A stretch of DNA of 64,000 nucleotides from Adineta vaga. Taxonomy: Eukaryota > Animalia > Rotifera. The notes under the pieces are model-generated. The model made no database searches. It was not told where the DNA came from and was given only the letters and a program-made list of their open reading frames with translations. Positions 39,575-58,896 of the stretch are shown here, piece after piece. The stretch spans positions 2,356,001 to 2,420,000 of the forward strand of contig CP075496.1 in the NCBI GenBank assembly GCA_021613535.1, given 5' to 3'. Positions within the stretch are counted from its first letter, which is position 1; the number at the start of each line of letters is the position of its first letter. The translations under genes and the position numbers were made by a program.

Positions 39575-42564
<2,990 letters not shown>

Positions 42565-44613: not shown

Positions 44614-45686
44614 TTTATTCTTTTATTTATTTAATATAAATAATTTCTTTTTTTTCACATCAGACATCTTTCTTTGAATTTTCAGTGAAGATCTTCTTTC
44701 TATATGAAATATACATTCGCAATATGAATGCTTGATTACATCTAGTATTAATAATATGGTTAATGTCATTCTACGTATTTATTTTCCTTTCCTTTACAGA
44801 AATAATTGAATTTTATATGTAGTTAATTTTCTGGTTCGAAAAATCTCCGATTTGTTAATCATAGTTTTTCAACAGATGTCACATTTTGATTTTCTAATGA
44901 TTACATTTGCTTGTTTTTCATATAGGCAACAAACGTCATTAGTTAACATAGTTTATTTGTCATGTACAGTTAATCTCGTTGTAGATTAAGATACTTTCTA
45001 CAATCAAATGACGGAAAAACATTGTTCTTTATCTCTAACATCGAAACCTATTCTTCTATTCGTCTAGATGAATAATATAATAATAACAAATCTATTCCGT
45101 TAATTAAGATTGAAGTATACTTATAGAATGTAATATCTTCACTATTTATGAGATATGAATATAAAAGAATAGTAAATTAGTTATTTGATAATATATGTAT
45201 GTTTAATTATTGAAGAACAGAAAAAAAAGTATTGACATTTGAAATTTCTATATATATATACATAGACAATTGTCTTCATCGAACAAAAATTTCACTGTTG
45301 TCAATGACAAAAACCGCACAGAAATGAGCAGAAGACAACGATAGAAAAGAGAGAAAAAAAACAAACAAGAATCGTGACCATATGTATATAGATATATAAT
45401 ATTGAATTGTGATGTTCTGATTGATTTTTCTTTTTGAACAATAGACAACTAATTTTGTTCTCAAATTATTGCCAGACTGGATCGAATTGATACATTTTCT
45501 TTTCTATTCGACTACATGCAAAATTCTTCGGATAAATAAACAAACAAAAACAAACGTAAGAATATTCGTTTCCACATAGAATAGAAGACAATTCATATGT
45601 ATGAGCTAAAAGAAAGAAGACATAGCAAAAATAAAGTGTGGGTATGTTTTTTTCGTATATGGGAAGAAAACAAACAAGCAAATACT

Positions 45687-47914
45687 TCAACGTCGAATGA
45701 GATCATCATCGAAGGGATTAGTACCACGTTTTGGTGTAAAGATAGCTGGTTGACGATGATTTGTATTTGGAGATTGAGCTTGAGCTGCCATTGAATAACC
45801 ATAAGGTGAAAAGGGATTTGTCGGATTATTACTTTGAATAAGAGCATTTAAGTTTGAATTGAAAGCATCATTGATCGTTTGAGGTGGGACGGATGATGGT
45901 ACGGATTCATAGGGTTCAGGTATTTGTTCATTAAATATAGGAGTTTGACTTGTTAACCAAAGATTTGAAGTGAGATTTTCGTTGGTATTAGTCATCAATG
46001 ATGACGAAGAAGGCAGTGGTGCCTGTACGAATACTGGTGGTTGTGGTGGAATGAATGGGGATTTCGTTGTTGGAAGAGAAAAATGATTAATATCATGCGT
46101 ATAACCATTCGTATTTGTTGAATCAATTAATGATAATTTGTTAAGTTCATTTGTTGTTTGTACAGGTTCAACTTCTTCTTCAATAACTAAAAGAAAAGTT
46201 TTGTTTTATGAAGAAGAAATAAAGACACGAAAATATGTTAATACATACTTGTACTCGGAAGTAATTCTTTATTTCGTGCTTCTTGTATTGACGGTAAATC
46301 ACTGGGTCTTAATGAACTTTGTCGTTTAAAAGCACCTAATGTTGTTTGATTAAGATCACCTACACGAAGTGATGCACTTCGCATAAAAGCATCGGAATCA
46401 GTTCCTTTCGGTCGTGGTCTTTCTATGGCACCATTTTTTTGCAGAGAAGAATTAGTTAACGTTGACATTGTATTTAAATTATATGGAATTGGTTCTAAGA
46501 TAATAATAAAAAAAATGACATAAGAATACATTTCAAGATATGTTCAGTGAAATTCTACCAGCAATGATAGCACTCTGAGGATCAATCAAACGTTCTGTGA
46601 TAGACGTTGTACGAAATGAACCAAAACGTGTAAAAGATGTACCATTTTGTGTATATTCAACAGTAACGCTACATTCACGATCACGTTTTTGCTTTCGTTC
46701 TAGACATATTTGAAATGCACAACCAACAGCATGACTCAAACGTTCACCCTAAATTATGTAAATATATGAAAGAAAATTTTCGAATGAATGTTTTTCTTCT
46801 TCTTCTTCTTTTACCGAATCTTTAATTGCAAGAAAACCATGACAAAGCCAACGACGTGTTGTGCCATCTCGACATATATATGCAAAACCTTTTTCATGAT
46901 GACGATCCGGAGCACAAAACGAAACTTTTTCAATCGTTTGATCAACGATCAGACCCTTTCGAAAAACAAATAACAACATAATATATTTCATCACAAGAAT
47001 CTCAACATACTTTATTGGTTTCATCAACAACTCGAAGAGCATCACCAGATATGTGTAAAACAGCTTTAATATGTTTACCTTTTTGCTAAAAAAAAGAACA
47101 ATTCAATAAATAATCTTTTACATGAAATCAACAGAACTTACATTCAATAGAGCTTGAATTGCTTGTTCACAAACATGCATTCCTCGTGATTCTTGAACTT
47201 CTACACTTCCAAGATACTAAATATCATTCGCTTTGAACATTAAGTTTATCTTATCATTCAATTTACTCTACCTTAACACTAAAATTACAAGCACCAGAAC
47301 GTACAGATTTCTCATCATCTTGCCATTGTGGTGGTTTATTTTCTGTAGTTGTATTATTTGTTGTAGTTGGTACATTATTATTGTTATTATTTGTTTTCGT
47401 TGAATGATCTGTACTATTGTTATTGTTATTATTATTATTATTTCGACTATCATTCGATGTATTTCCTTTTTTTCGACTACGAAAACTTAATGTTCGTCTT
47501 AATCGATCCATTTGTCGATGTTTTTTTCTTCGAACTGTTTCAGTATTGGGTGGTGGTGGTTGTTGTTGTAATGGCAATGATTTCGGTTGATCGTCTAAAA
47601 ATATATCCAGGAAGAAAAATAAATAAACTAATCATTTTTAACAAATACAATAGAAGATCATGCAAGCAGAAGCAACATGCAAATTTACAAATTTAATCAA
47701 GACCAATCAATAATATATTTATTTTAAAATCAAGCGAATCTGTAACATGCAAAACTTTCATATCCCGTTATTTGTTAATAGAAGCATGGAATGAATAATG
47801 AATTAGTTTGAATTTATCTTCAGTGGTTTTACCTGTTACTATCGTTGAAGTACCATTTGCTGGTGGTTGACGATTCTTACGAGAATGTAAACGGCGTGAA
47901 TGCTCAGCACCCAT
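45687..47914 (-). CDS. NUMB: Numb endocytic adaptor (PTB domain, NumbF, NPF motifs)
   Basis: [106 protein letters not shown], and C-terminal NPF motifs. An upstream in-frame exon starts MGAEHS at 47914. Confidence 0.96.
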
Positions 47915-48737
47915 TATATCTCTTTTTCTCTTTTATTTATAGAATTCTACTGAGGAAAATCAAGGGATATTGAAGGATATATATATATGTATATACAAAC
48001 TAATATCAATCAAAACACAAAACAATAAATCAAACGAATAATAATATCGATCAAAGAAATAACGTACCGATTAAATTGAGTTCTTTTTCTGCTTGTATTG
48101 AATCATCTAAAATAGTTTTGTACTTTTAATCTGATGAATAATGTCTTGAAAAGAACAACAAACAAGAGTGAAAAAAAACTGGGATTAGTCGTTATCAATA
48201 GACCATCGAACTACAAAATGTCACGAGTAAAACAGACTGATTCGTTTTCATAAAAATCTCTCGCACCATATTGATGACCTTCTTCAACACAATACGTGAA
48301 GGAACGTCACCCATGATACGTATATGTTGTTTTTTTTCAGTTCGCTTTTTAAAGGCTTAACATTCTTTCTTAATGCATATGTATTTTTTTGCTCTTTAAT
48401 TTCACTCCTAAAGAAAAAAACATCTCTCATTATGACTAACACTGACGTATCGATGAGAAACAAAATCGAAAAATTTTAATGTTTAAACAAAAACTATCTA
48501 ATAAGTACCTTGTGAAAAGAATTCTCGTTTTTTTTTCTCTCACTTTCAAATAGAAATAAATAAATGATAAAGAATAAACAGGACAAGATAACGGATATAG
48601 GAAGCGCTATGAGTAACAATCGTTTTCAAAGCTTATGTGGCGCTTGATGAATTGGATTTTTTCATTGGATAGATGGAGATACGAATCGAAGACTTCATTC
48701 TATTTATTATTATTATTATTTTCGAATTTGATTAACA

Positions 48738-51700
48738 ATGACTGATGAAAATGATATTGATAATGAAGCAAATAATGTTGATATTAATGGAAAAATCGAA
48801 AATTATCCTCAACCATCATTAAGTAAAGAAAGCAAACACCAAACTCCTTTGTTGTTTTTTGACTAAATCTTGTTGTCTGATTAGAAATGATTTTAGAAGT
48901 TAGTAATAATTCAACTATCGAACGTCATATTTATAATGTATTACGTAAACATTTTCTTGAACAACGTTCAATAACATGGAAACCAATTAAAGTCGAACTA
49001 ATTATCAACACACAATTAACCGATGATTTTTTTGGTAAATATTTCACTTTTTTTCTTTCTTCAATTCGAGTCTTTCTTTTATCTATATCATTACAAATAC
49101 TTAGTATATATGGCAAGTATCTATCGCTCTCTTCTATCTTATCATTTCAATGTTCATTTGAAAACATCAACATTGTATGCAATTCATAGATATTGTTTTA
49201 TTATTCAATTCTCTTTATCGATTCTGCACTTCATCTTCTTTTACATAGATATACGTTGTTCTTTTGTTTAAATAGATAAATCCTTTTATTTCGTCTTACA
49301 ATAGATAGGATATTAACTTCGACTCTTAGTACTTAATATTTCGTTATGCATGTTTATTATCGTCTTTTTTTTCTTCAACATTTTTTGACAATATCGAATT
49401 ATGTGTATGCACAAAACTATATGCGTATCAATACTAAATATATGTTCGATTTCAATTCTAATCTGTTGACATATTTCGTGGTTTCGCTCGTTTTGATATT
49501 GATTTGTTTTTTTTTGATGAAATATTTTCTATTTTAGCAATACGAAAACAATTTGAAAAAGCATCGGATGGAAACCGATCTGAATTCGAAGAACAATATG
49601 GATTTCTTATTGAAAATGATGCACAAACTCAGGATATCTGTAGCAACGGTTATCATTGTACCGAAACTTCATTCAATGTACTAGGTAAATACATGAAAAT
49701 GATTTTCTTCTGAGAGCAAACAATACGTTTTGTTCGGTTGTTCTTCACTGATTAATTATTTAACCTCTTGGGCAGGAGAGGAGAAAGAAAACTTAAATTT
49801 AGTTAAAAACAAACATTGCTCTAAGCTTATACTTAGTTTTTAACAAAAATAACTTTTGTATTCTCATATGTGTGATTATTTACATATGCTTGCTTATCTC
49901 TTTTATCCTTGTCCCTAGAGATTCTTTCTCTCTCTCTCTATATATATATCTATATATTTATGTACGTTGGTAAAATTTGCTCCTATTGACTTGTAAGTAT
50001 TTCTATCACTATGAATCAATGTAGATCGCTCTATATCTATTATTGTTTCAATCACTGACCACTTTGTTTTATACTTCGCTCTGAATGGTTGTTGAAAACA
50101 TTTTTAAAAAAAGAGATCGCAGTACGCTATCGGTTATTGGTTGTGTTATGTTTATTTAAATTTTTTCAATCTAATAATTCTTAAAACATCAAACAAAATA
50201 TCGAAGCTCTCACTTTGCATTATGATTATTGATTGTCATGCGATTTCTACTAATTCTTAGATAAAAAAATAATCATTTAGTAGCATTCTTTCTTATTGTT
50301 ACGTATTTACACCTCTTTATTTTTTCCTTTCGTTTATATGTCGTTATGTTTATTTATATAAAACTTCTTCACTTATATTTGATCCTATTTTGCACATTTA
50401 TCACTCATGGTGTTTTTCTTTTCTTACTAATCAGACCAAAAAGAAAATGATTCTTGCCATTGTCGCACGTTTTTCTAAATGACTGTTTGTAGAATTTGCT
50501 TGCATGTGCTCTTTGTTTCTCTCTTTTTTTATCTTGCTGTTAATTTGTGTTAGTTTTTTTTTAATTTCATATCGGTATACGGGAGACCTTCACATACATA
50601 CATATGTATATGCATACAATGCATTTTTTGCATGGGGCTTTGGTAGTTAATTTTATGTTTTCTATCTCTCTCTCTCTCTCTTTCTTGTATTGAAAAGAAC
50701 AACAAACATTGTTTTGTGTGTGTTCGAGTGTTTCAAATATTCATTTAGGATTTATGAAGATATGCTGTTCAAATGGATGAATATATACCAAATAAACAAC
50801 AATGTGAGTTTTCAAATGATGACCAATGCTCTGGCTTTTGACATCTTTCTCCTATTTATCCTGCCTTATTATCCATGTCAATCGACATCGCGCATTAGAC
50901 CAATATTCGATGTAATATGTCTACATATATCGTGGTTTTTATGATCATCTTCACATAGCTCATATATATATATCTATTTGTATTTATAAATTACACTTAG
51001 CTTACGTCGTTTAGTATTCAGTTGTGATTTCTATGTGCTATTTTTCTTTCATTTTGTTTGCTGCTCGCATAGATATAAAGATGGTTTGTATACTGTGATT
51101 CTTCTTAATATTTGTCTACGAATGTTTCTTGATGCAGAGATATGCACTGAAACCATCGTACATTTAGTTAGATATAACATTCGTTTTATTTTTCGTCAAC
51201 TTTGTCCCCGAGAAATCTCAATTCTTTTCCTATTTGGTTGCTTTTTTTGTTTGCAATCGATCACTGAATTGAAAGTTTTTTCATTGCTATCCATATATCT
51301 ATTTAATAATTACAATTGATATCTTTATAACTATATGTCTAGTAATTGGTCTCTTGTGTCTGCATGCTTCTTTTTTCTCTTTATATGAATGTTAGATTGA
51401 AATGTTTCTGCGATGATTTAATTTCGAAATCTTTTATCAACATTTTTGCTTTGATGATTATGAGAAACACTATAATGAGAACAAAAAAGTAAACGATTGA
51501 AATTTGAACATGTTTTTGATAAAAATATCTGCATGTTGTTAATTTTTTACCGTTTTGTAATCTCATATATTCGTCGTTATCTTGTTTTCCTGTTTCAATT
51601 GAATTCTTTCTTTAATTGTTTATTATTCTTTTCGTCTATGCGTGTATTTTCATTGTTGTTTCAATGTTCATTGTTCGTCTATGTGTATATATTTTAGGAC

Positions 51701-54493
51701 ATAGTAAATGTGGTGTGTACGTTTGCAAATATGCTGACGTATGTATTCGACATGCGAGTGTTCGACGAACATGGGAAGGAAATCTAACGATTAAAATGAT
51801 CGTTTTTAAGGTGAGCATTGATGATATTTATGAGAAAAATAAACTGATCATTGATCTCGTCTATTAGATTGTTGAAGGAAAAAAAACAGCTGCTCTTGTT
51901 CGTAAAGGACCCAAACTACAACCTATATCACCTACAGTACATTTTACATGTCATTCTTCAGTCATTACACCGAAAGAAACGGATGATCTCGAAAAACAAT
52001 TCGATCAATCTCAGGTAGAAATTAAAGATATAAATTATTGTTTTATTTTAAATAATTCTTTCTTTATATAGATATTTTTATATGAATTCAAGGGTCGAGA
52101 AACAGTGAAACGACCACATCATTGTTTACCATATGCTATTGTCAGCCTCATACAAGATGGTCTGTATCATTTTTTTAAACGTTTCGTTTAGAATTTCATA
52201 TTCATTTTTAGGAAGTCAATGGCCAACGAATTTTGATGATCTGGGTAATGAGCCTGATATTTTAGAAACAGATACTCTACGAGTGATTGCGCAAGCTGAT
52301 GATCCTTCATTACAAAATAAATTAAAAGAGAATGTTGAGTTAGCTGAAGCAGCCACACTTGCATTGCAACATGTCTATGAAGAAGATCTTCCTGCTCCAT
52401 CACTATCACCACCATCATTCCCTGTCGTTGAAGGAGAACAAGAACAACAACTACCTCAACTATTAACGGATTCAGAAACAATACCAACACTAACAACGAC
52501 ATCATCAGATAATACATCCACTCAGATAGTTAATGGTGTCGATTCATTGTCGTCTCCGGCACCTTTAAGCGAACATTTGCTAACAACAACAACAACAATA
52601 CCATTTTCAACAGAAATAACGACAGATATTACGAATGGTTCATTAAATTCTACGGTAATACCACCACCTCCACCTTCACCACCATCTTCATCAGCAACAC
52701 CTTCTGCAAGCAAAACACCAACTCCATCAGAAGCAACTGTGATACCATTATCTACTTCGGGTGCAGCTATGCAAGCAGCTTATCGACAACAAACAGGACT
52801 TTTAGGTGCTTTACCAGGTGCGGCTGCTCTACGGTCAGTTCCAGGCTCTGTCTATGCTACAACAGCTGGTCTAATGAATGGTCATTCTGGACAAATAGTA
52901 TATGGTGGTAAGTTCTCACTTTTAATCTAATAATGAAACGTTATGTTACATTACTTATGTCTTAATCATCCTAGGTATGTCAGCAGATGCTCTACGTAGT
53001 TTTGGAAGTACAGCAGCTGGTTCTGCTGCTACTTCCTATGTATTGACTAATCATGCTGGTCAAACAGTACAACAACCTGCACTGTATGCTGCACAGCTAC
53101 AAGCTATTGCTCAACAACAACAACAACACCAACAACAAGCAGCTCAATTAGCTGCGTTTGCTGCAGCTCAACAGCAACAACAACAAAGTTTAATGAATGG
53201 TATACCAGCTGGTTGTATGCTTGTACGTACAGCTAATGGTGGTTATGCTCTATTGGCACAATCTCCGACAGCTGCAGCAGCAGCACTACAAGCACAGGCA
53301 CCACTTGCACAGCAACAATATTTTTCTATAAATGCGGCTGGTCAACCAACAGCAGTTTCAGCAGGGGCAGGAGGACGATTTCCTGTTGCCTTTGTTGGTG
53401 GTCAACCACAACAAGTTATGTATCAATACGCTGGACAACCAACTATGCAAGCTGCTCCAACACAATACATTCAACTGCCGTCAAATTATGCACAACAGCA
53501 ACAGGCACATCAACAGTTATCAACGAGTCCTGTTATGCAATCAACAGCGTCAGCCGCAGCACAAGGTTTGTTCAATTTTTCAATAAAACTTCCTGTAGAC
53601 TATACATAATCTTCTTTGTTTCTAGCTTACACGAATCAACCAACCATACAATATATTAGTGCATCACAATCAGCTAATAATAGTGCTAATAATTCTTCAT
53701 CGAATTCTATGTCTTCGATGAATCCGTCGGGAACATTACTATCATCATCTCCGACATCCGCAATGATTTCACCCCAAAAACAAAGTGCTGCATCAGCAAC
53801 AGCTGCTGCTCTTCAACAACAACAGCAATATCAACATGCCCAATATTCAACAACATCATCTCAACAACAGCAGCAGCAACATCAATCTGTTAATACTGCG
53901 CATGGTACTAATGTTTATTATGCAGCAATAGCTCAAGCACAAGCTCAATATACAGCACAAGTACAAGCCCAACAACAAGCAGCTATGCTAGCACAACAGC
54001 AACAACAACTGAATTTAGTTTCTCAAGTACGAAATTGAATATATGATTTGAGAGAGAGAGAAGAATTGTATATCTGTTTTTTTTTAATATTTAGATGCCA
54101 TATGCAACTCAACAAGGTGTTCCACAACAGATGTATTATGCAACACCCGGTGGTCAAACAATATATCAAGCAGGTGGTCAAAGTTACGTTCTTTCTCAGC
54201 CAGGAACTACGACAACTGGTGCTCCAGCAATATATTCTGCAGGTCCTGCATTGCATAATGGTGCTACTCAACAACAAAATCAGCAGCAATCCATAGCTTA
54301 TCAAATAGCAGCTGCTGCCAACGGGCAACCCACAAATGCCGCCTATCAAATGCTTACTGCTGCATCCAATGGTAATGTACCTACATCACAACAGACGTCA
54401 GCAAATGCTGGTGTTGTTGTTCAACAATCAGCACAACTCGCACAACGTCCAAGTGTCTTATCACAAATGCGACATCATCCATACAGAAATTAA
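48738..54493 (+). CDS. TASOR/TEX15-type DUF3715 (pseudo-PARP) domain protein with a long Q/A/Y/G-rich C-terminus and terminal PY-NLS-like motif
   Basis: Spliced exons (48738-48822, 48885-49034, 49538-49684, 51698-51810, 51868-52014, 52072-~52159, ...) read NVLRKHFLEQ...LIINTQLTDDFFAIRKQF...EFEEQYGFL...ICSNGY...VLGHSKCGVYVCKYAD...IVFKIVEGK...ISPTVHFTCHSS...SQIFLYEF...RPHHCLPYAIVS. This matches recalled TASOR motifs (SYAFL, ICEKGL, LGxPSMGVYLSRYAD, IFKIMKGK, PTPxHECH, QYYFYEY, RPRHVCPYAVVS). Ends RHHPYRN. Confidence 0.8.
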
Positions 54494-54805
54494 ATATAAA
54501 TCTGTCGTTTTTTCACTTTTGTTTATCACTATTTGGTAACAGTAGGATATCAGCGTTTGATCATATTATCTAACTCCGAAAATTTCACTTACTTGTGTGT
54601 CACATTTTGTTTACTTCAATATATTGCTAACACTTGTACATTGAAATCAAATATATTCAACTATTATTTCATTTATGTTTTGTTTTTGATTGTATATAAA
54701 AGAAAAAAGAAAGAAATAGAAACGCCATTGTAATCGTATATGAACATATTCTTATTCTTCATACATATTTGATTTAACTACAATTCTCTAGATATTTGAG
54801 AAATA

Positions 54806-56567: not shown

Positions 56568-58896
56568 TCATGAGAATTCTTTGGATGTTGGTAGAGAAGT
56601 TTTCATTGACGATGGCCAAATATGATGTAATGATTGTAATCGATTTTCTATTCGATATGCGAGTTTAATTAAATAAAATGAATGAATTACTAAGAGGATT
56701 ACAAAGATTAAAATTAGAAATGATGTTTTTATTGGATAAGTTTTAAATTGATTGAATAATAGAGATAAATATTCAATGAATAGTTTGATAATAGATATAA
56801 TAGATAAAAAAATAATACGAAAATATTTTCGTAAGAAACCATTTGTGTTGGAATTCATCGGTGATAAATCATTATTTATCAGTAAATTTGATGACGATTC
56901 TAATGTAGATATTGGAGATTTTGAACGATTAGATGGTGATAAAGTTCGATCACGACTATGACTTGTTTGTCGTGTTCGAGATGATGTACGATGATATCCT
57001 ATCGGGCTATCTCCTACGATGATGAAAAAGACATGATTTTGTTTTCGAAAAATTGTTATCATAGGAAAGTAACATATGAATCCTGATAATTCACCTTATT
57101 TACTAAGTCTGTATTAATATGACATATGTTTCAATATTTCTTGTGTATAATCTTATGTTAAAAATGATTAGTCCATCATATTCATGAACAGATTGTCTAT
57201 AAATTAATACGAACATTTGTTTTATGAAGAAAACAAAATTCAATCGATACATTATTTTATGAACTGAACTCGAGTACATATTACCGAAAACATATATAGT
57301 TCACCTTCGGAACTTATATCCGGAGTAAATTTTTGGAATATTAAAAGCATTTTTTTCCCCCGATAGCATAATTAGTCTATTTGAATGAATGTTGATTTCA
57401 TCGTTAACAAAAGAAATTTAGTTTTTCAGCAAAAAAAAGAACTACTCAATTATAATCATATTTATAATGCTTCTCTACGAATGTTAACTTATGATTCGAT
57501 GACGTATAGGTTAGAAACCTTTTCCACTAGCCGAATAAGTAATCGTATGATGTAATAAAAAAATGGGAAAAAATCTTGGATTAAATTTAAGATCTTACTT
57601 GATATGGTATCAGTTTGTTTCTGTTGAGTTTTACTATGATGTGAGGATCGATTCGGTGGATTGTTTTGACATAGATTACCATTAAGATCACTAGATAAAT
57701 TGGAATCGATGGTTGAAGTTTTGAAATTTATTTTCTTTTTATCTGAATTAAAAGATTTTTTTGTTGATTGTTGTTGCAACTGATGTTTATCATCACTACT
57801 CTTTGAAGAAACGGATTGAGGTCGTCGTTTATTGATATTAATTGTTCGATCTTGTCCTAAACACATTTGTAGAACGTTATCATGTTCAGATTCATCCAAT
57901 GTTTCATAATGATTATTATGTTTCGATTTTTTTGTTGATTTTGTACTATAATTAGGATTACTATTTGATGACTTTAATGTTCCATTTTGCATTAAACGAC
58001 TGTCGTCATCATCTGCTGTTGAGCTTATTTCATTATTAAAACGTGAACAGATCGAAATGATTTTATCAAAAGCTTGATCACGTTGAAGAAATGAAGCATA
58101 GATAATCTTTTTCCCCGTAGGTTTCAATTGAATACCAATAGCTGTAGGAAAGATAAATGCTACACGTTCTTTAGTTACATTATCAATTTGTTCCCAACGA
58201 TAAACATGTTTTGTCACGTATGATATTATACGAGAATGAAAACAAAGATAGCGATCAGTTATATACATTTTACCTTGTAATAAAATATCTCCTGTAGGAA
58301 ACAATTCGATTAAACAAAGAAGAAATAATTATTGAACGATTTCTCTTACCTTGATATGCACATACATAGGAATCGATTAATTCAGGCATATCATCATCAG
58401 CTATTTCAGATTTAAATAATTTTTGAAAATGTTTTACACGTCGAGATGATTGTTCAGATGTAGTTCCATCAGATTTTTGTTGTCCACTATCACGTCTTGA
58501 TGTATCAAGTTGTTGTTGTTGTTGTTTTTGTTGACGAAGTTGTTTTGGAAGATTATTTAATTCTAAAGAATTATTATCATCAGTATATCGATCTTCTTGT
58601 TCACTTTCTAATTCACTATCAGTTGTCGTTGATGATACTGTTGTAAGCGAATTGATTTGTAGTAAAGAAGAAGAAGAAGTTTTGTCATTTGAATTTGCAA
58701 GTTTAGCACCAGTACTATCAATTGATGATGAAGATGAATTTGCGACAGTTATATTATTTCCTGGAAGTTTCGCTTGATTCGATGAACATTTTGAAAATGA
58801 ATCTTTTTTTTGTAGAACAGTTTTCGATTCATTCGTATTGGTTTCATCAAAGACATTCGATGAAATTATCATTGATACAGGTCGACTATTGGCCAT
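56568..58896 (-). CDS. GRAM-domain protein with C-terminal transmembrane segment (GRAMD2-like; no VASt domain seen)
   Basis: HFQKLFK...LIDSYVCAYQGDILLQGKMYITDRYLCFHSRI...IFPTAIGI...YASFLQRDQAF. The last exon carries the hydrophobic FLILIFVILLVIHSFYLIKLAYRIENRL. Confidence 0.9.

What the first reader, a model, noticed from the sequence alone, without database searches (positions are those of the whole stretch)
48738..54493. 'Mini-TASOR': HUSH/TEX15-type pseudo-PARP domain fused to a prion-like tail, a candidate invertebrate foreign-DNA silencing factor
Seen: five exons scattered over ~3.3 kb, fragmented in the ORF track, splice into a domain matching recalled DUF3715 motifs in order. It is followed by a P/S/T linker, several hundred residues of Q/A/Y/G-rich low complexity, and a terminal R-x2-PY motif. 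No SPOC domain or TEX15 repeats are visible. Established: in mammals DUF3715 occurs in TASOR/TASOR2 (HUSH complex, silencing retroelements and intronless foreign DNA via SETDB1/H3K9me3) and TEX15 (piRNA-guided silencing). Bdelloids have low TE loads and much horizontally acquired DNA. Inference: a compact, condensate-forming nuclear factor that may combine the TASOR scaffold role with a periphilin-like self-assembling role, i.e. an uncharacterised HUSH-like system.
Basis: partly seen in the sequence, partly recalled or inferred. Interest (0 to 1): 0.8.

Follow-up and report, generated by a model that had tools for sequence, protein, structure and literature searches.

The report
Rotifer TASOR-type pseudo-PARP protein gene
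This is a real, expressed ten-exon rotifer gene for a nuclear-looking protein that joins a catalytically dead TASOR-type "pseudo-PARP" domain to a long glutamine/alanine-rich disordered tail; the domain is already named in public databases for sister species, and nothing here shows that it builds a HUSH-like silencing complex.

Summary
Window 48738-54493 (+) is one 10-exon gene (CDS 2817 nt, 938 aa). All nine GT..AG introns appear as joints in spliced contigs from three studies, and domain and Q-rich exons share contigs.

The N-terminus is a DUF3715/TASOR pseudo-PARP. The public Adineta vaga model of this gene scores 51.9 bits and a full-length orthologue 82.5 (cut-off 28.5). The only solved structure matched is TASOR 6TL1 (profile E 1e-23; window's own exons E 1e-8). 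The catalytic His position is Leu, as in TASOR, and TASOR's 14-residue β8-β9 loop is kept.

The tail (492 aa, Q 21%, A 19%, charged 1.8%) ends in RHHPY, invariant in 12 rotifer sequences including Brachionus.

Corrections:
- The family is rotifer-wide, not bdelloid-specific.
- UniRef already names it "TASOR pseudo-PARP domain-containing protein".
- The A. vaga public model lacks exons 1-3.

The HUSH reading is unsupported. The TASOR segments that bind MPP8 and periphilin are missing, and no periphilin-type domain was found in the genome. A silencing role is inferred by analogy only. Both structure predictions failed.

The parts
48738..48822 (+). Exon 1: start codon and acidic/Asn-rich N-terminal leader (28 codons + 1 nt)
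   Evidence: An in-frame TGA lies at 48729-31, just upstream. Orthologues begin with the same MTDEN start. The joint 48822|48885 is seen in runs X1, X2 and X6.
48885..49034 (+). Exon 2: N-terminal helix region of the pseudo-PARP domain (aligns to TASOR 6TL1 chain from residue 16)
   Evidence: Joints 48822|48885 and 49034|49538. The profile alignment to 6TL1 starts in this exon's sequence. It is 82% identical to the ohnologue.
49538..49684 (+). Exon 3: DUF3715 profile positions 8-46. It holds the Leu (49606-49608) at the position of the PARP catalytic His, which is L184 in TASOR.
   Evidence: Pfam E 1.2e-5. The only PDB hit is 6TL1 chain 57-99, E 0.086. The residue mapping comes from the alignments.
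49685..51697 (+). Intron 3, 2013 nt, unusually long beside the 53-74 nt introns of the same gene. It holds five collinear blocks conserved with the ohnologue's intron, plus low-depth RNA contigs.
   Evidence: Joint 49684|51698 in X1, X2 and X5. Conserved blocks at 49992-50038, 50070-50096, 50192-50261, 50484-50528 and 50627-50671; the reversed control gives none.
51698..51810 (+). Exon 4: DUF3715 profile 42-80. It holds the retained Tyr (51718-51720), equivalent to TASOR Y217.
   Evidence: Pfam E 5e-5. P0021:10-135 against 6TL1 gives E 1.1e-8. Joints.
51868..52014 (+). Exon 5: central strands of the pseudo-PARP. Its Phe in KQFDQSQ aligns with TASOR Y295, the residue that plugs the nicotinamide cleft.
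   Evidence: Alignments. It is 88% identical to the ohnologue. Joints.
52072..52159 (+). Exon 6: last two strands of the domain and the extended β8-β9 loop (52081-52122, 14 residues, Y-E-F...R-P-H-H), then the invariant LPYA motif.
   Evidence: Ungapped alignment to TASOR Y303-H316. R-P-x-H and P-Y-A are invariant in 12 rotifer sequences.
52212..52907 (+). Exon 7: about 60 conserved post-domain residues, then a P/S/T-rich linker and the start of the Q/A-rich tail
   Evidence: Composition T17 S16 P15 % in the linker. Orthologues were found with this exon. It is 49-55% identical to the ohnologue.
52975..54026 (+). Exons 8-9 (52975-53565, 53626-54026): Q/A/S/Y-rich low-complexity tail with conserved islands such as LVRTANG and NAAGQP
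   Evidence: Joints. Composition. The islands recur in bdelloid and monogonont-like sequences.
54095..54493 (+). Exon 10: end of the tail, with RHHPY (54470-54484) six residues before the stop. This is a candidate PY-NLS.
   Evidence: RHHPY is present within the last 10 residues of all 12 sequences with an intact C-terminus. The stop TAA is at 54491-93.

Best explanation
The locus encodes the rotifer representative of the DUF3715 (RDTS, TASOR/TEX15 pseudo-PARP) family. It is a 938-aa protein made of a catalytically dead TASOR-type pseudo-PARP domain (exons 2-6), a short conserved helical extension, a P/S/T linker and a ~490-residue almost uncharged Q/A/S/Y-rich disordered tail that ends in a conserved R-H-H-P-Y motif.

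Shown: one spliced mRNA; membership of DUF3715; specific similarity to the TASOR pseudo-PARP, including Leu at the catalytic His position and the TASOR-type 14-residue β8-β9 loop; purifying selection on both domain and tail; conservation of the whole architecture across bdelloid and monogonont rotifers; this gene and its ohnologue being the only DUF3715 loci found by a six-frame Pfam search of this genome.

Inferred: the PY motif drives transportin-type nuclear import. The tail gives multivalent self-association or partner binding. The pseudo-PARP does in rotifers what it does within TASOR and TEX15, namely a non-enzymatic step needed for RNA-directed, co-transcriptional repression of transposons. 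It would act here as a stand-alone module and not as the scaffold of a mammalian-type HUSH complex.
For: Transcript: nine GT..AG joints, with contigs spanning E4-E8, E7-E10 and E1-E4. Intronless metatranscriptome contigs encode the full-length orthologues P0018 and P0023 in one ORF.

Domain: Pfam PF12509 at 51.9 bits for the window's own product P0021 and 82.5 bits for the full-length orthologue, cut-off 28.5. TASOR 6TL1 is the sole significant PDB match (E 3.6e-22 and 1.1e-23; window's own exons E 1.1e-8). No PF00644 hit. Leu stands at TASOR L184, Tyr at Y217, Phe at Y295, and the loop aligns without gaps to Y303-H316 (with numbering from PMC7532188).

Selection: dN/dS is 0.12 for the domain and 0.32 for the tail against the ohnologue, at dS about 0.8.

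Architecture: tail composition and RHHPY are conserved in Adineta, Rotaria, Didymodactylos and Brachionus. Only two DUF3715 loci are found in the genome.

Function by analogy: the DUF3715 domain is required for H3K9me3 deposition and LINE-1 silencing, and TEX15 domains can replace TASOR's (PMC7532188, PMC10578480).
Against: No functional data exist for any invertebrate DUF3715 protein. The SPOC, DomI and linker segments that human TASOR needs for repression and for binding MPP8 and periphilin are absent. TASOR Y305, essential in human cells, is Phe here and is not aromatic in some monogonont-like sequences. No periphilin-type domain was detected in the genome. Q-rich tails are also typical of transcriptional co-activators. 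Both AlphaFold runs failed (pLDDT 32 and 36), so the fold rests on sequence-profile similarity alone. Nuclear localisation is inferred from a five-residue motif.
Confidence: 0.5

Rival explanations
1. A general nuclear co-regulator of transcription or RNA processing. The Q/A-rich tail would act as an activation or condensate-forming region and the pseudo-PARP as a protein- or RNA-binding module, with no special role in transposon or foreign-DNA silencing.
For: The tail composition (Q 21%, A 19%, charged 1.8%) resembles glutamine-rich activation and low-complexity domains. No HUSH assembly modules are present. No periphilin-like domain is found in the genome. The neighbouring genes are ordinary housekeeping genes.
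Against: Every DUF3715 protein studied so far (TASOR, TASOR2, TEX15) acts in repression, and the domain is functionally interchangeable across very distant members (PMC10578480).
Confidence: 0.3
2. A ZAP/PARP13-like RNA-binding factor of cytoplasmic RNP granules. The dead PARP domain plus a prion-like tail would target RNAs for decay or storage, for instance during desiccation.
For: TASOR's pseudo-PARP binds ssRNA weakly and resembles ZAP (PMC7532188). A prion-like tail is typical of granule proteins.
Against: The strictly conserved C-terminal R-x2-PY in a basic, disordered context fits a nuclear import signal. No PDB match to ZAP or other PARPs reached E<1, whereas TASOR gave 1e-23.
Confidence: 0.1
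3. A true TASOR orthologue that assembles a canonical HUSH complex with MPP8 and periphilin orthologues, i.e. the reader's 'scaffold' reading taken literally.
For: It and its ohnologue are the only DUF3715 loci found in the genome. The domain is closest to TASOR among solved structures.
Against: No SPOC, DomI, periphilin-binding helix or DomII/PIN is present; everything after the domain is low complexity. Lge1/periphilin domain search: best hit 18.8 bits, below cut-off and at the level of the archaeal controls. The four SPOC loci in the genome lie more than 1 Mb from the DUF3715 loci.
Confidence: 0.04
4. Gene-model artefact: the domain exons and the Q-rich exons belong to different genes.
For: Public annotation breaks the gene at the 2-kb intron in A. 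vaga (P0021 starts inside intron 3) and A. ricciae (P0022 plus the 135-aa P0033 on the same contig).
Against: Spliced contigs join E1-E4, E4-E8 and E7-E10. Single-ORF metatranscript contigs encode full-length orthologues. The frame is kept across all nine junctions.
Confidence: 0.01

Closest known systems
Human TASOR pseudo-PARP / DUF3715 (RDTS) domain, PDB 6TL1
   Same: About 200 residues align end to end (E 1e-23). Leu replaces the catalytic His, the single retained Tyr (Y217) is kept, an aromatic residue sits at the Y295 plug position, and the 14-residue β8-β9 loop with R-P-x-H followed by P-Y-A-[VI]-V-S is kept without gaps.
   Different: The rotifer protein has none of TASOR's SPOC, DomI, periphilin-binding linker or DomII/PIN. 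It is 938 aa against 1670 aa. Y305 is Phe. Its tail is Q/A-rich low complexity.
'TASOR-like' invertebrate proteins (DUF3715-SPOC-DomI) and vertebrate TEX15, as defined in PMC10578480
   Same: They share the DUF3715 domain, which that paper reports across metazoa.
   Different: The rotifer protein has no SPOC-DomI and no TEX15 domain, so it fits neither named architecture. It is a DUF3715-only protein with a disordered tail. Whether its domain branches with TASOR-like or TEX15 domains was not tested.
UniRef 'TASOR pseudo-PARP domain-containing protein' entries of Adineta steineri, A. ricciae, Didymodactylos carnosus and Brachionus calyciflorus, and NCBI I4U23_017882 of A. vaga
   Same: These are orthologues or the same gene. 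P0021 holds window exons 4-10 exactly.
   Different: These are automatic names only. The A. vaga model lacks exons 1-3, and several models are chimeric or split (P0016, P0013, P0022/P0033).
Periphilin N-terminal domain and FET-family (FUS/EWS/TAF15) low-complexity region plus C-terminal PY-NLS
   Same: A disordered, tyrosine-bearing, self-association-prone region. FET proteins also end in R-x(2-5)-PY (my knowledge). Low-complexity regions of such proteins can partly replace the periphilin NTD (PMC7544229).
   Different: The composition here is Q/A-rich with almost no Arg, whereas periphilin's NTD is Arg/Tyr-rich. There is no sequence homology and no RRM or other RNA-binding domain. The resemblance is analogy only.

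Membership tests
Pfam DUF3715 (PF12509) | Whole-protein score above the gathering cut-off (28.5 bits) | tested here: met
   P0021 (the window's own E4-E10) scores 51.9 bits over profile 42-150. Window E3 adds profile 8-46 (25.7 bits). The full-length orthologue P0018 scores 82.5 bits.
TASOR-type pseudo-PARP (RDTS domain) | Full-length similarity to the solved TASOR domain rather than to active PARPs | tested here: met
   6TL1 is the only PDB chain with E<0.01: 1.1e-23 over chain 16-208 and 1.1e-8 with the window's own exons. No PF00644 hit.
TASOR-type pseudo-PARP (RDTS domain) | Degenerate NAD site: the catalytic His is replaced by a hydrophobic residue and only one Tyr is kept | tested here: met
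   Leu at 49606-08 aligns with TASOR L184 and Tyr at 51718-20 with Y217 (numbering from PMC7532188). The position of the catalytic Glu could not be placed without a structure.
TASOR-type pseudo-PARP (RDTS domain) | Extended 14-residue β8-β9 loop with the functionally essential Y305 | tested here: inconclusive
   The loop has the same length and aligns without gaps (52081-52122), and R-P-x-H is invariant. However, Y305 is Phe here, Leu in one Rotaria sequence and non-aromatic in monogonont-like sequences.
PARP fold | Predicted or solved 3-D structure with the ADP-ribosyltransferase fold | tested here: inconclusive
   Two AlphaFold2 runs on shallow alignments gave mean pLDDT 31.6 and 35.8, so no fold search was run. 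ESM-feature neighbours are PARP catalytic-domain clusters at 0.92, which is a lead only.
TASOR-like proteins (PMC10578480 definition) | DUF3715 followed by SPOC and DomI | tested here: not met
   Pfam finds only PF12509 in P0018, P0021, P0023 and P0015. After about 60 conserved residues the sequence is P/S/T linker and Q/A low complexity.
TEX15 | One or two TEX15 domains C-terminal to DUF3715 | tested here: not met
   No TEX15-family Pfam hit at E<=0.1.
HUSH complex | Periphilin partner (C-terminal Lge1-type helical domain) encoded in the genome | tested here: inconclusive
   PF11488 six-frame search of the genome: best 18.8 bits, E 0.16, below the 25-bit cut-off and similar to archaeal control noise. 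The model is short (71 positions), so absence is not proven.
HUSH complex | MPP8 (chromodomain plus ankyrin) partner, and SETDB1/MORC2 effectors recruited by the protein | not tested
   No family model is specific for MPP8, and binding cannot be tested here.
PY-NLS (transportin-1 cargo) | R/K/H-x(2-5)-P-Y in a disordered, net-basic stretch | tested here: met
   RHHPY lies 6 residues from the C-terminus. The last 22 residues hold 3 Arg and 2 His and no acidic residue. The motif is invariant in 12 sequences. Import itself cannot be tested here.
Prion-like / Q/N-rich domain | At least 30 Q+N in an 80-residue window, with few charged residues | tested here: met
   The maximum is 33 Q+N per 80 residues, and charged residues make up 1.8% of 492 aa. 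PLAAC itself was not available.

The most novel reading that the evidence does not exclude
Rotifers run RNA-directed silencing with a self-contained RDTS protein. The pseudo-PARP would supply the still-unknown silencing step, while its own prion-like tail supplies the self-association that periphilin gives HUSH. That would make it the minimal natural form of the TASOR/TEX15 module and a direct handle on what the domain does.
Probability: 0.15. Interest if true: 0.75.

Novelty: new variant of a known kind. Interest (0 to 1): 0.42.

Why it matters
The molecular job of the DUF3715/RDTS domain is still unknown, even though it is essential in both HUSH and piRNA-directed silencing. Here the domain stands alone on a disordered tail, in a protein that with its ohnologue is the only DUF3715 protein found in the genome and is conserved under purifying selection across rotifers. 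Such a protein offers a simpler setting to ask what the domain binds and does. Practically, the report corrects the public A. vaga gene model, which lacks the first three exons and so about half of the domain. It also shows that the architecture is not a bdelloid speciality.

Tried and rejected
1. Structure: two AlphaFold2 jobs on the orthologue domain, with 7 and then 12 aligned rotifer sequences, gave mean pLDDT 31.6 and 35.8. They are unusable, so no Foldseek or VIA search was run.

2. Relatives outside rotifers: three word-index searches returned only rotifer proteins and exon-sized fragments. The word filter cannot reach TASOR-level divergence, so this says nothing about other phyla.

3. 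The spliced protein was not joined or sent to any tool. Exons were searched by reference, and the public model P0021 (E4-E10 of this gene) and the orthologue P0018 stood in for the whole protein. A score for the window's own full domain in one piece is therefore missing.

4. ESM Atlas: the tail gave no usable named hit. The domain gave PARP catalytic clusters at 0.92, which is a lead only.

5. Rfam on 48500-54700: no match.

6. Earlier notes of this scan near the locus: nothing relevant.

7. Literature: no paper holds both 'rotifer' and 'TASOR'. The supplement of PMC10578480 is not held, so I could not check whether rotifer sequences were in its tree.

8. A TASOR versus TEX15 placement of the domain by phylogeny was not possible, because no TEX15 or TASOR sequences could be fetched by the tools.


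Full report
**What is there**

The window is AT-rich eukaryotic DNA. Its genome is 100.8 Mb in six contigs, and the window is C4:2356001-2420000. A public protein labelled Adineta vaga I4U23_017882 (P0021) contains the window's exons 4-10 exactly and contiguously. I therefore take the organism to be the bdelloid rotifer A. vaga.

Three-frame translation and the raw sequence give a 10-exon gene on the + strand:
- E1 48738-48822
- E2 48885-49034
- E3 49538-49684
- E4 51698-51810
- E5 51868-52014
- E6 52072-52159
- E7 52212-52907
- E8 52975-53565
- E9 53626-54026
- E10 54095-54493

The CDS is 2817 nt, or 938 codons plus TAA. An in-frame TGA lies directly upstream of the ATG, and orthologues begin with the same MTDEN residues.

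**Transcript evidence**

I laid assembled contigs of four public runs (three studies, two organism labels) on 48700-54560. All nine introns appear as GT..AG joints. They also fix the E2 acceptor at 48885; my first reading had been 48897.

Three contigs establish continuity:
- A 1908-nt contig carries E4-E5-E6-E7-E8.
- A 2087-nt contig carries E7-E10.
- A 329-nt contig joins E1, E2, E3 and the first bases of E4.

Independently, two environmental metatranscriptome contigs (2.9 and 2.6 kb, no introns) encode full-length relatives, with domain plus tail in one ORF.

The runs are only guessed to be RNA by the tool, but spliced joints are themselves the evidence.

**The domain**

Exons were searched by reference, and two database proteins stood in for the whole protein: P0021 (this gene from E4 on) and P0018 (a full-length bdelloid orthologue, about 88% identical in the domain).

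Pfam results:
- DUF3715 in E3: profile positions 8-46, E 1.2e-5.
- DUF3715 in E4: profile positions 42-80, E 5e-5. The two hits are collinear.
- P0021 scores 51.9 bits and P0018 82.5 bits against a cut-off of 28.5. No other family matches: no PARP catalytic family, no SPOC and no TEX15.

Comparison with solved structures:
- A profile of rotifer domains matches one solved structure only, human TASOR's pseudo-PARP 6TL1. E is 3.6e-22 and 1.1e-23 over chain residues 16-208.
- The window's own E4-E6 give E 1.1e-8.
- E3 alone hits the adjoining part of the same chain, E 0.086.

I used the residue numbering of Douse et al. (PMC7532188); chain residue +109 before and +118 after the crystallisation deletion reproduces their Y303-H316. 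The alignments then place the following:
- Leu at TASOR L184, the catalytic His position of active PARPs.
- Tyr at Y217, the one NAD-site residue TASOR keeps.
- Phe at Y295, which plugs the nicotinamide cleft.
- An ungapped 14-residue counterpart of the β8-β9 loop Y303-H316 (window 52081-52122). R-P-x-H and the following P-Y-A are invariant in 12 rotifer sequences.

The essential TASOR Y305 is Phe here and is not conserved as an aromatic residue across rotifers. That feature is therefore only half met.

Two AlphaFold2 runs failed (pLDDT 32 and 36). The fold assignment rests on sequence profiles, and I ran no structure search.

**The tail**

After about 60 conserved residues comes a linker (T 17%, S 16%, P 15%). 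A 492-residue tail follows with Q 21%, A 19%, S 10%, Y 5% and only 1.8% charged residues. Its maximum is 33 Q+N in 80 residues.

Tail composition is conserved in bdelloid and monogonont-like sequences: Q 14-31%, charged 1.6-4%. Short islands such as LVRT-x-NG and NAAGQP recur.

All 12 sequences with an intact C-terminus end in RHHPY within the last ten residues. The motif sits in a stretch with three Arg, two His and no acidic residue. That fits the R/K/H-x(2-5)-PY rule of PY nuclear localisation signals (my knowledge). Import itself is inference.

**Distribution and selection**

Orthologues occur in Adineta steineri (two copies), A. ricciae, Rotaria species, Didymodactylos carnosus and the monogonont Brachionus calyciflorus. 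UniRef already calls several of them 'TASOR pseudo-PARP domain-containing protein'.

A six-frame Pfam search of the window's genome finds only two DUF3715 loci, this one and one on C1. The C1 copy has the same exon structure, including the long introns.

Against the C1 copy, dS is about 0.8. dN/dS is 0.12 for the domain exons and 0.32 for the tail exons. Both parts and both copies are therefore under purifying selection. The two A. steineri proteins pair with the two A. vaga copies, so the duplication is old.

Public models break at the 2-kb intron:
- The A. vaga model starts at an ATG inside intron 3 and lacks E1-E3.
- A. ricciae has a truncated model plus a separate 135-aa protein on the same contig.

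**How it most likely works**

Shown: a non-catalytic TASOR-type domain on a long disordered tail, carried on one mRNA, conserved and constrained.

Established elsewhere:
- TEX15 domains can replace it across a very old divergence (PMC10578480).
- Periphilin's disordered NTD acts by self-association and can be partly replaced by other low-complexity regions (PMC7544229).

Inferred: the rotifer protein is nuclear and uses the pseudo-PARP for the same, still undefined, repression step. Its tail would provide multivalency.

The evidence does not support a HUSH-like complex:
- TASOR's scaffold (residues 350-1085: SPOC-DomI for MPP8, 1014-1095 for periphilin) has no counterpart here.
- No Lge1/periphilin-type domain passes the cut-off in the genome. 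The best hit is 18.8 bits, at the level of archaeal controls.
- The four SPOC loci lie more than 1 Mb away from the DUF3715 loci.
- The architecture is shared with monogononts, so it cannot be tied to bdelloid-specific genome biology.

**Comparison, novelty and verdict**

The protein is a member of DUF3715. It is not 'TASOR-like' in the published sense (DUF3715-SPOC-DomI) and it is not TEX15. PMC10578480 already reports DUF3715 proteins across metazoa, and databases already name these rotifer proteins.

New here are the corrected full gene model with RNA support, the description of a conserved DUF3715 + Q/A-rich tail + terminal PY architecture across rotifers, and the residue-level match to TASOR's loop.

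I rate it a new variant of a known kind, of moderate interest. The identity is near certain. The silencing role has odds of roughly one in three, and a literal HUSH scaffold role is unlikely.

**Surroundings**

The neighbours are ordinary: an MCM-type helicase gene upstream (+), a gene with a Numb-like PTB sequence (-), a small + strand gene from 54806, and a GRAM-domain gene (-). Their identities come from my reading of the translations and were not tested.

Noticed in passing
window 49685-51697 (intron 3), blocks 49992-50038, 50070-50096, 50192-50261, 50484-50528, 50627-50671: The 2013-nt intron shares five collinear blocks (74-87% identity) with the 1607-nt intron of the ohnologue on C1, although coding dS between the copies is about 0.8. 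A reversed-sequence control gives none. Three of the blocks contain TTTGCAT, which is octamer-like. This may be an intronic enhancer or another constrained element.
   Followed up: partly
window 50285-51672 and joint 49684|50749: Lower-depth contigs (about 10 against 50-60 for exons) lie inside intron 3. One run shows an alternative GT..AG joint from E3 to 50749, whose reading frame stops after 10 codons. This could be a retained intron, a poison exon or a separate RNA. The strand is unknown because only contigs were available.
   Followed up: partly
window 51640-51697 (start of public model P0021): The public A. vaga protein I4U23_017882 begins at an ATG inside intron 3 and reads through the acceptor, so it lacks exons 1-3 (126 residues, about half of the pseudo-PARP). 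A. ricciae shows the same break: P0022 plus the 135-aa P0033 on one contig. P0016 and P0013 are chimeric with neighbouring genes.
   Followed up: yes
L005 (G000:C1:9593000-9602999, - strand): The ohnologous copy has all ten exons, long introns 2 and 3 (767 and 1607 nt) and the RHHPY end. Its expression was not checked.
   Followed up: partly
window 40943-42472 (+), 45466-47914 (-), 57489-58896 (-): The neighbouring genes look like an MCM-family helicase, a Numb-like PTB-domain protein with an Asn-rich stretch, and a GRAM-domain protein. This is by eye from the ORF translations only.
   Followed up: no
window 49917-49971, 50651-50693, 52655-52701: Short simple repeats (CT/AT runs in intron 3, a proline-codon run in E7) at which the read-laying tool reported cut contigs. 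They probably explain the spurious non-GT..AG 'joints' such as 52601>53814.
   Followed up: no
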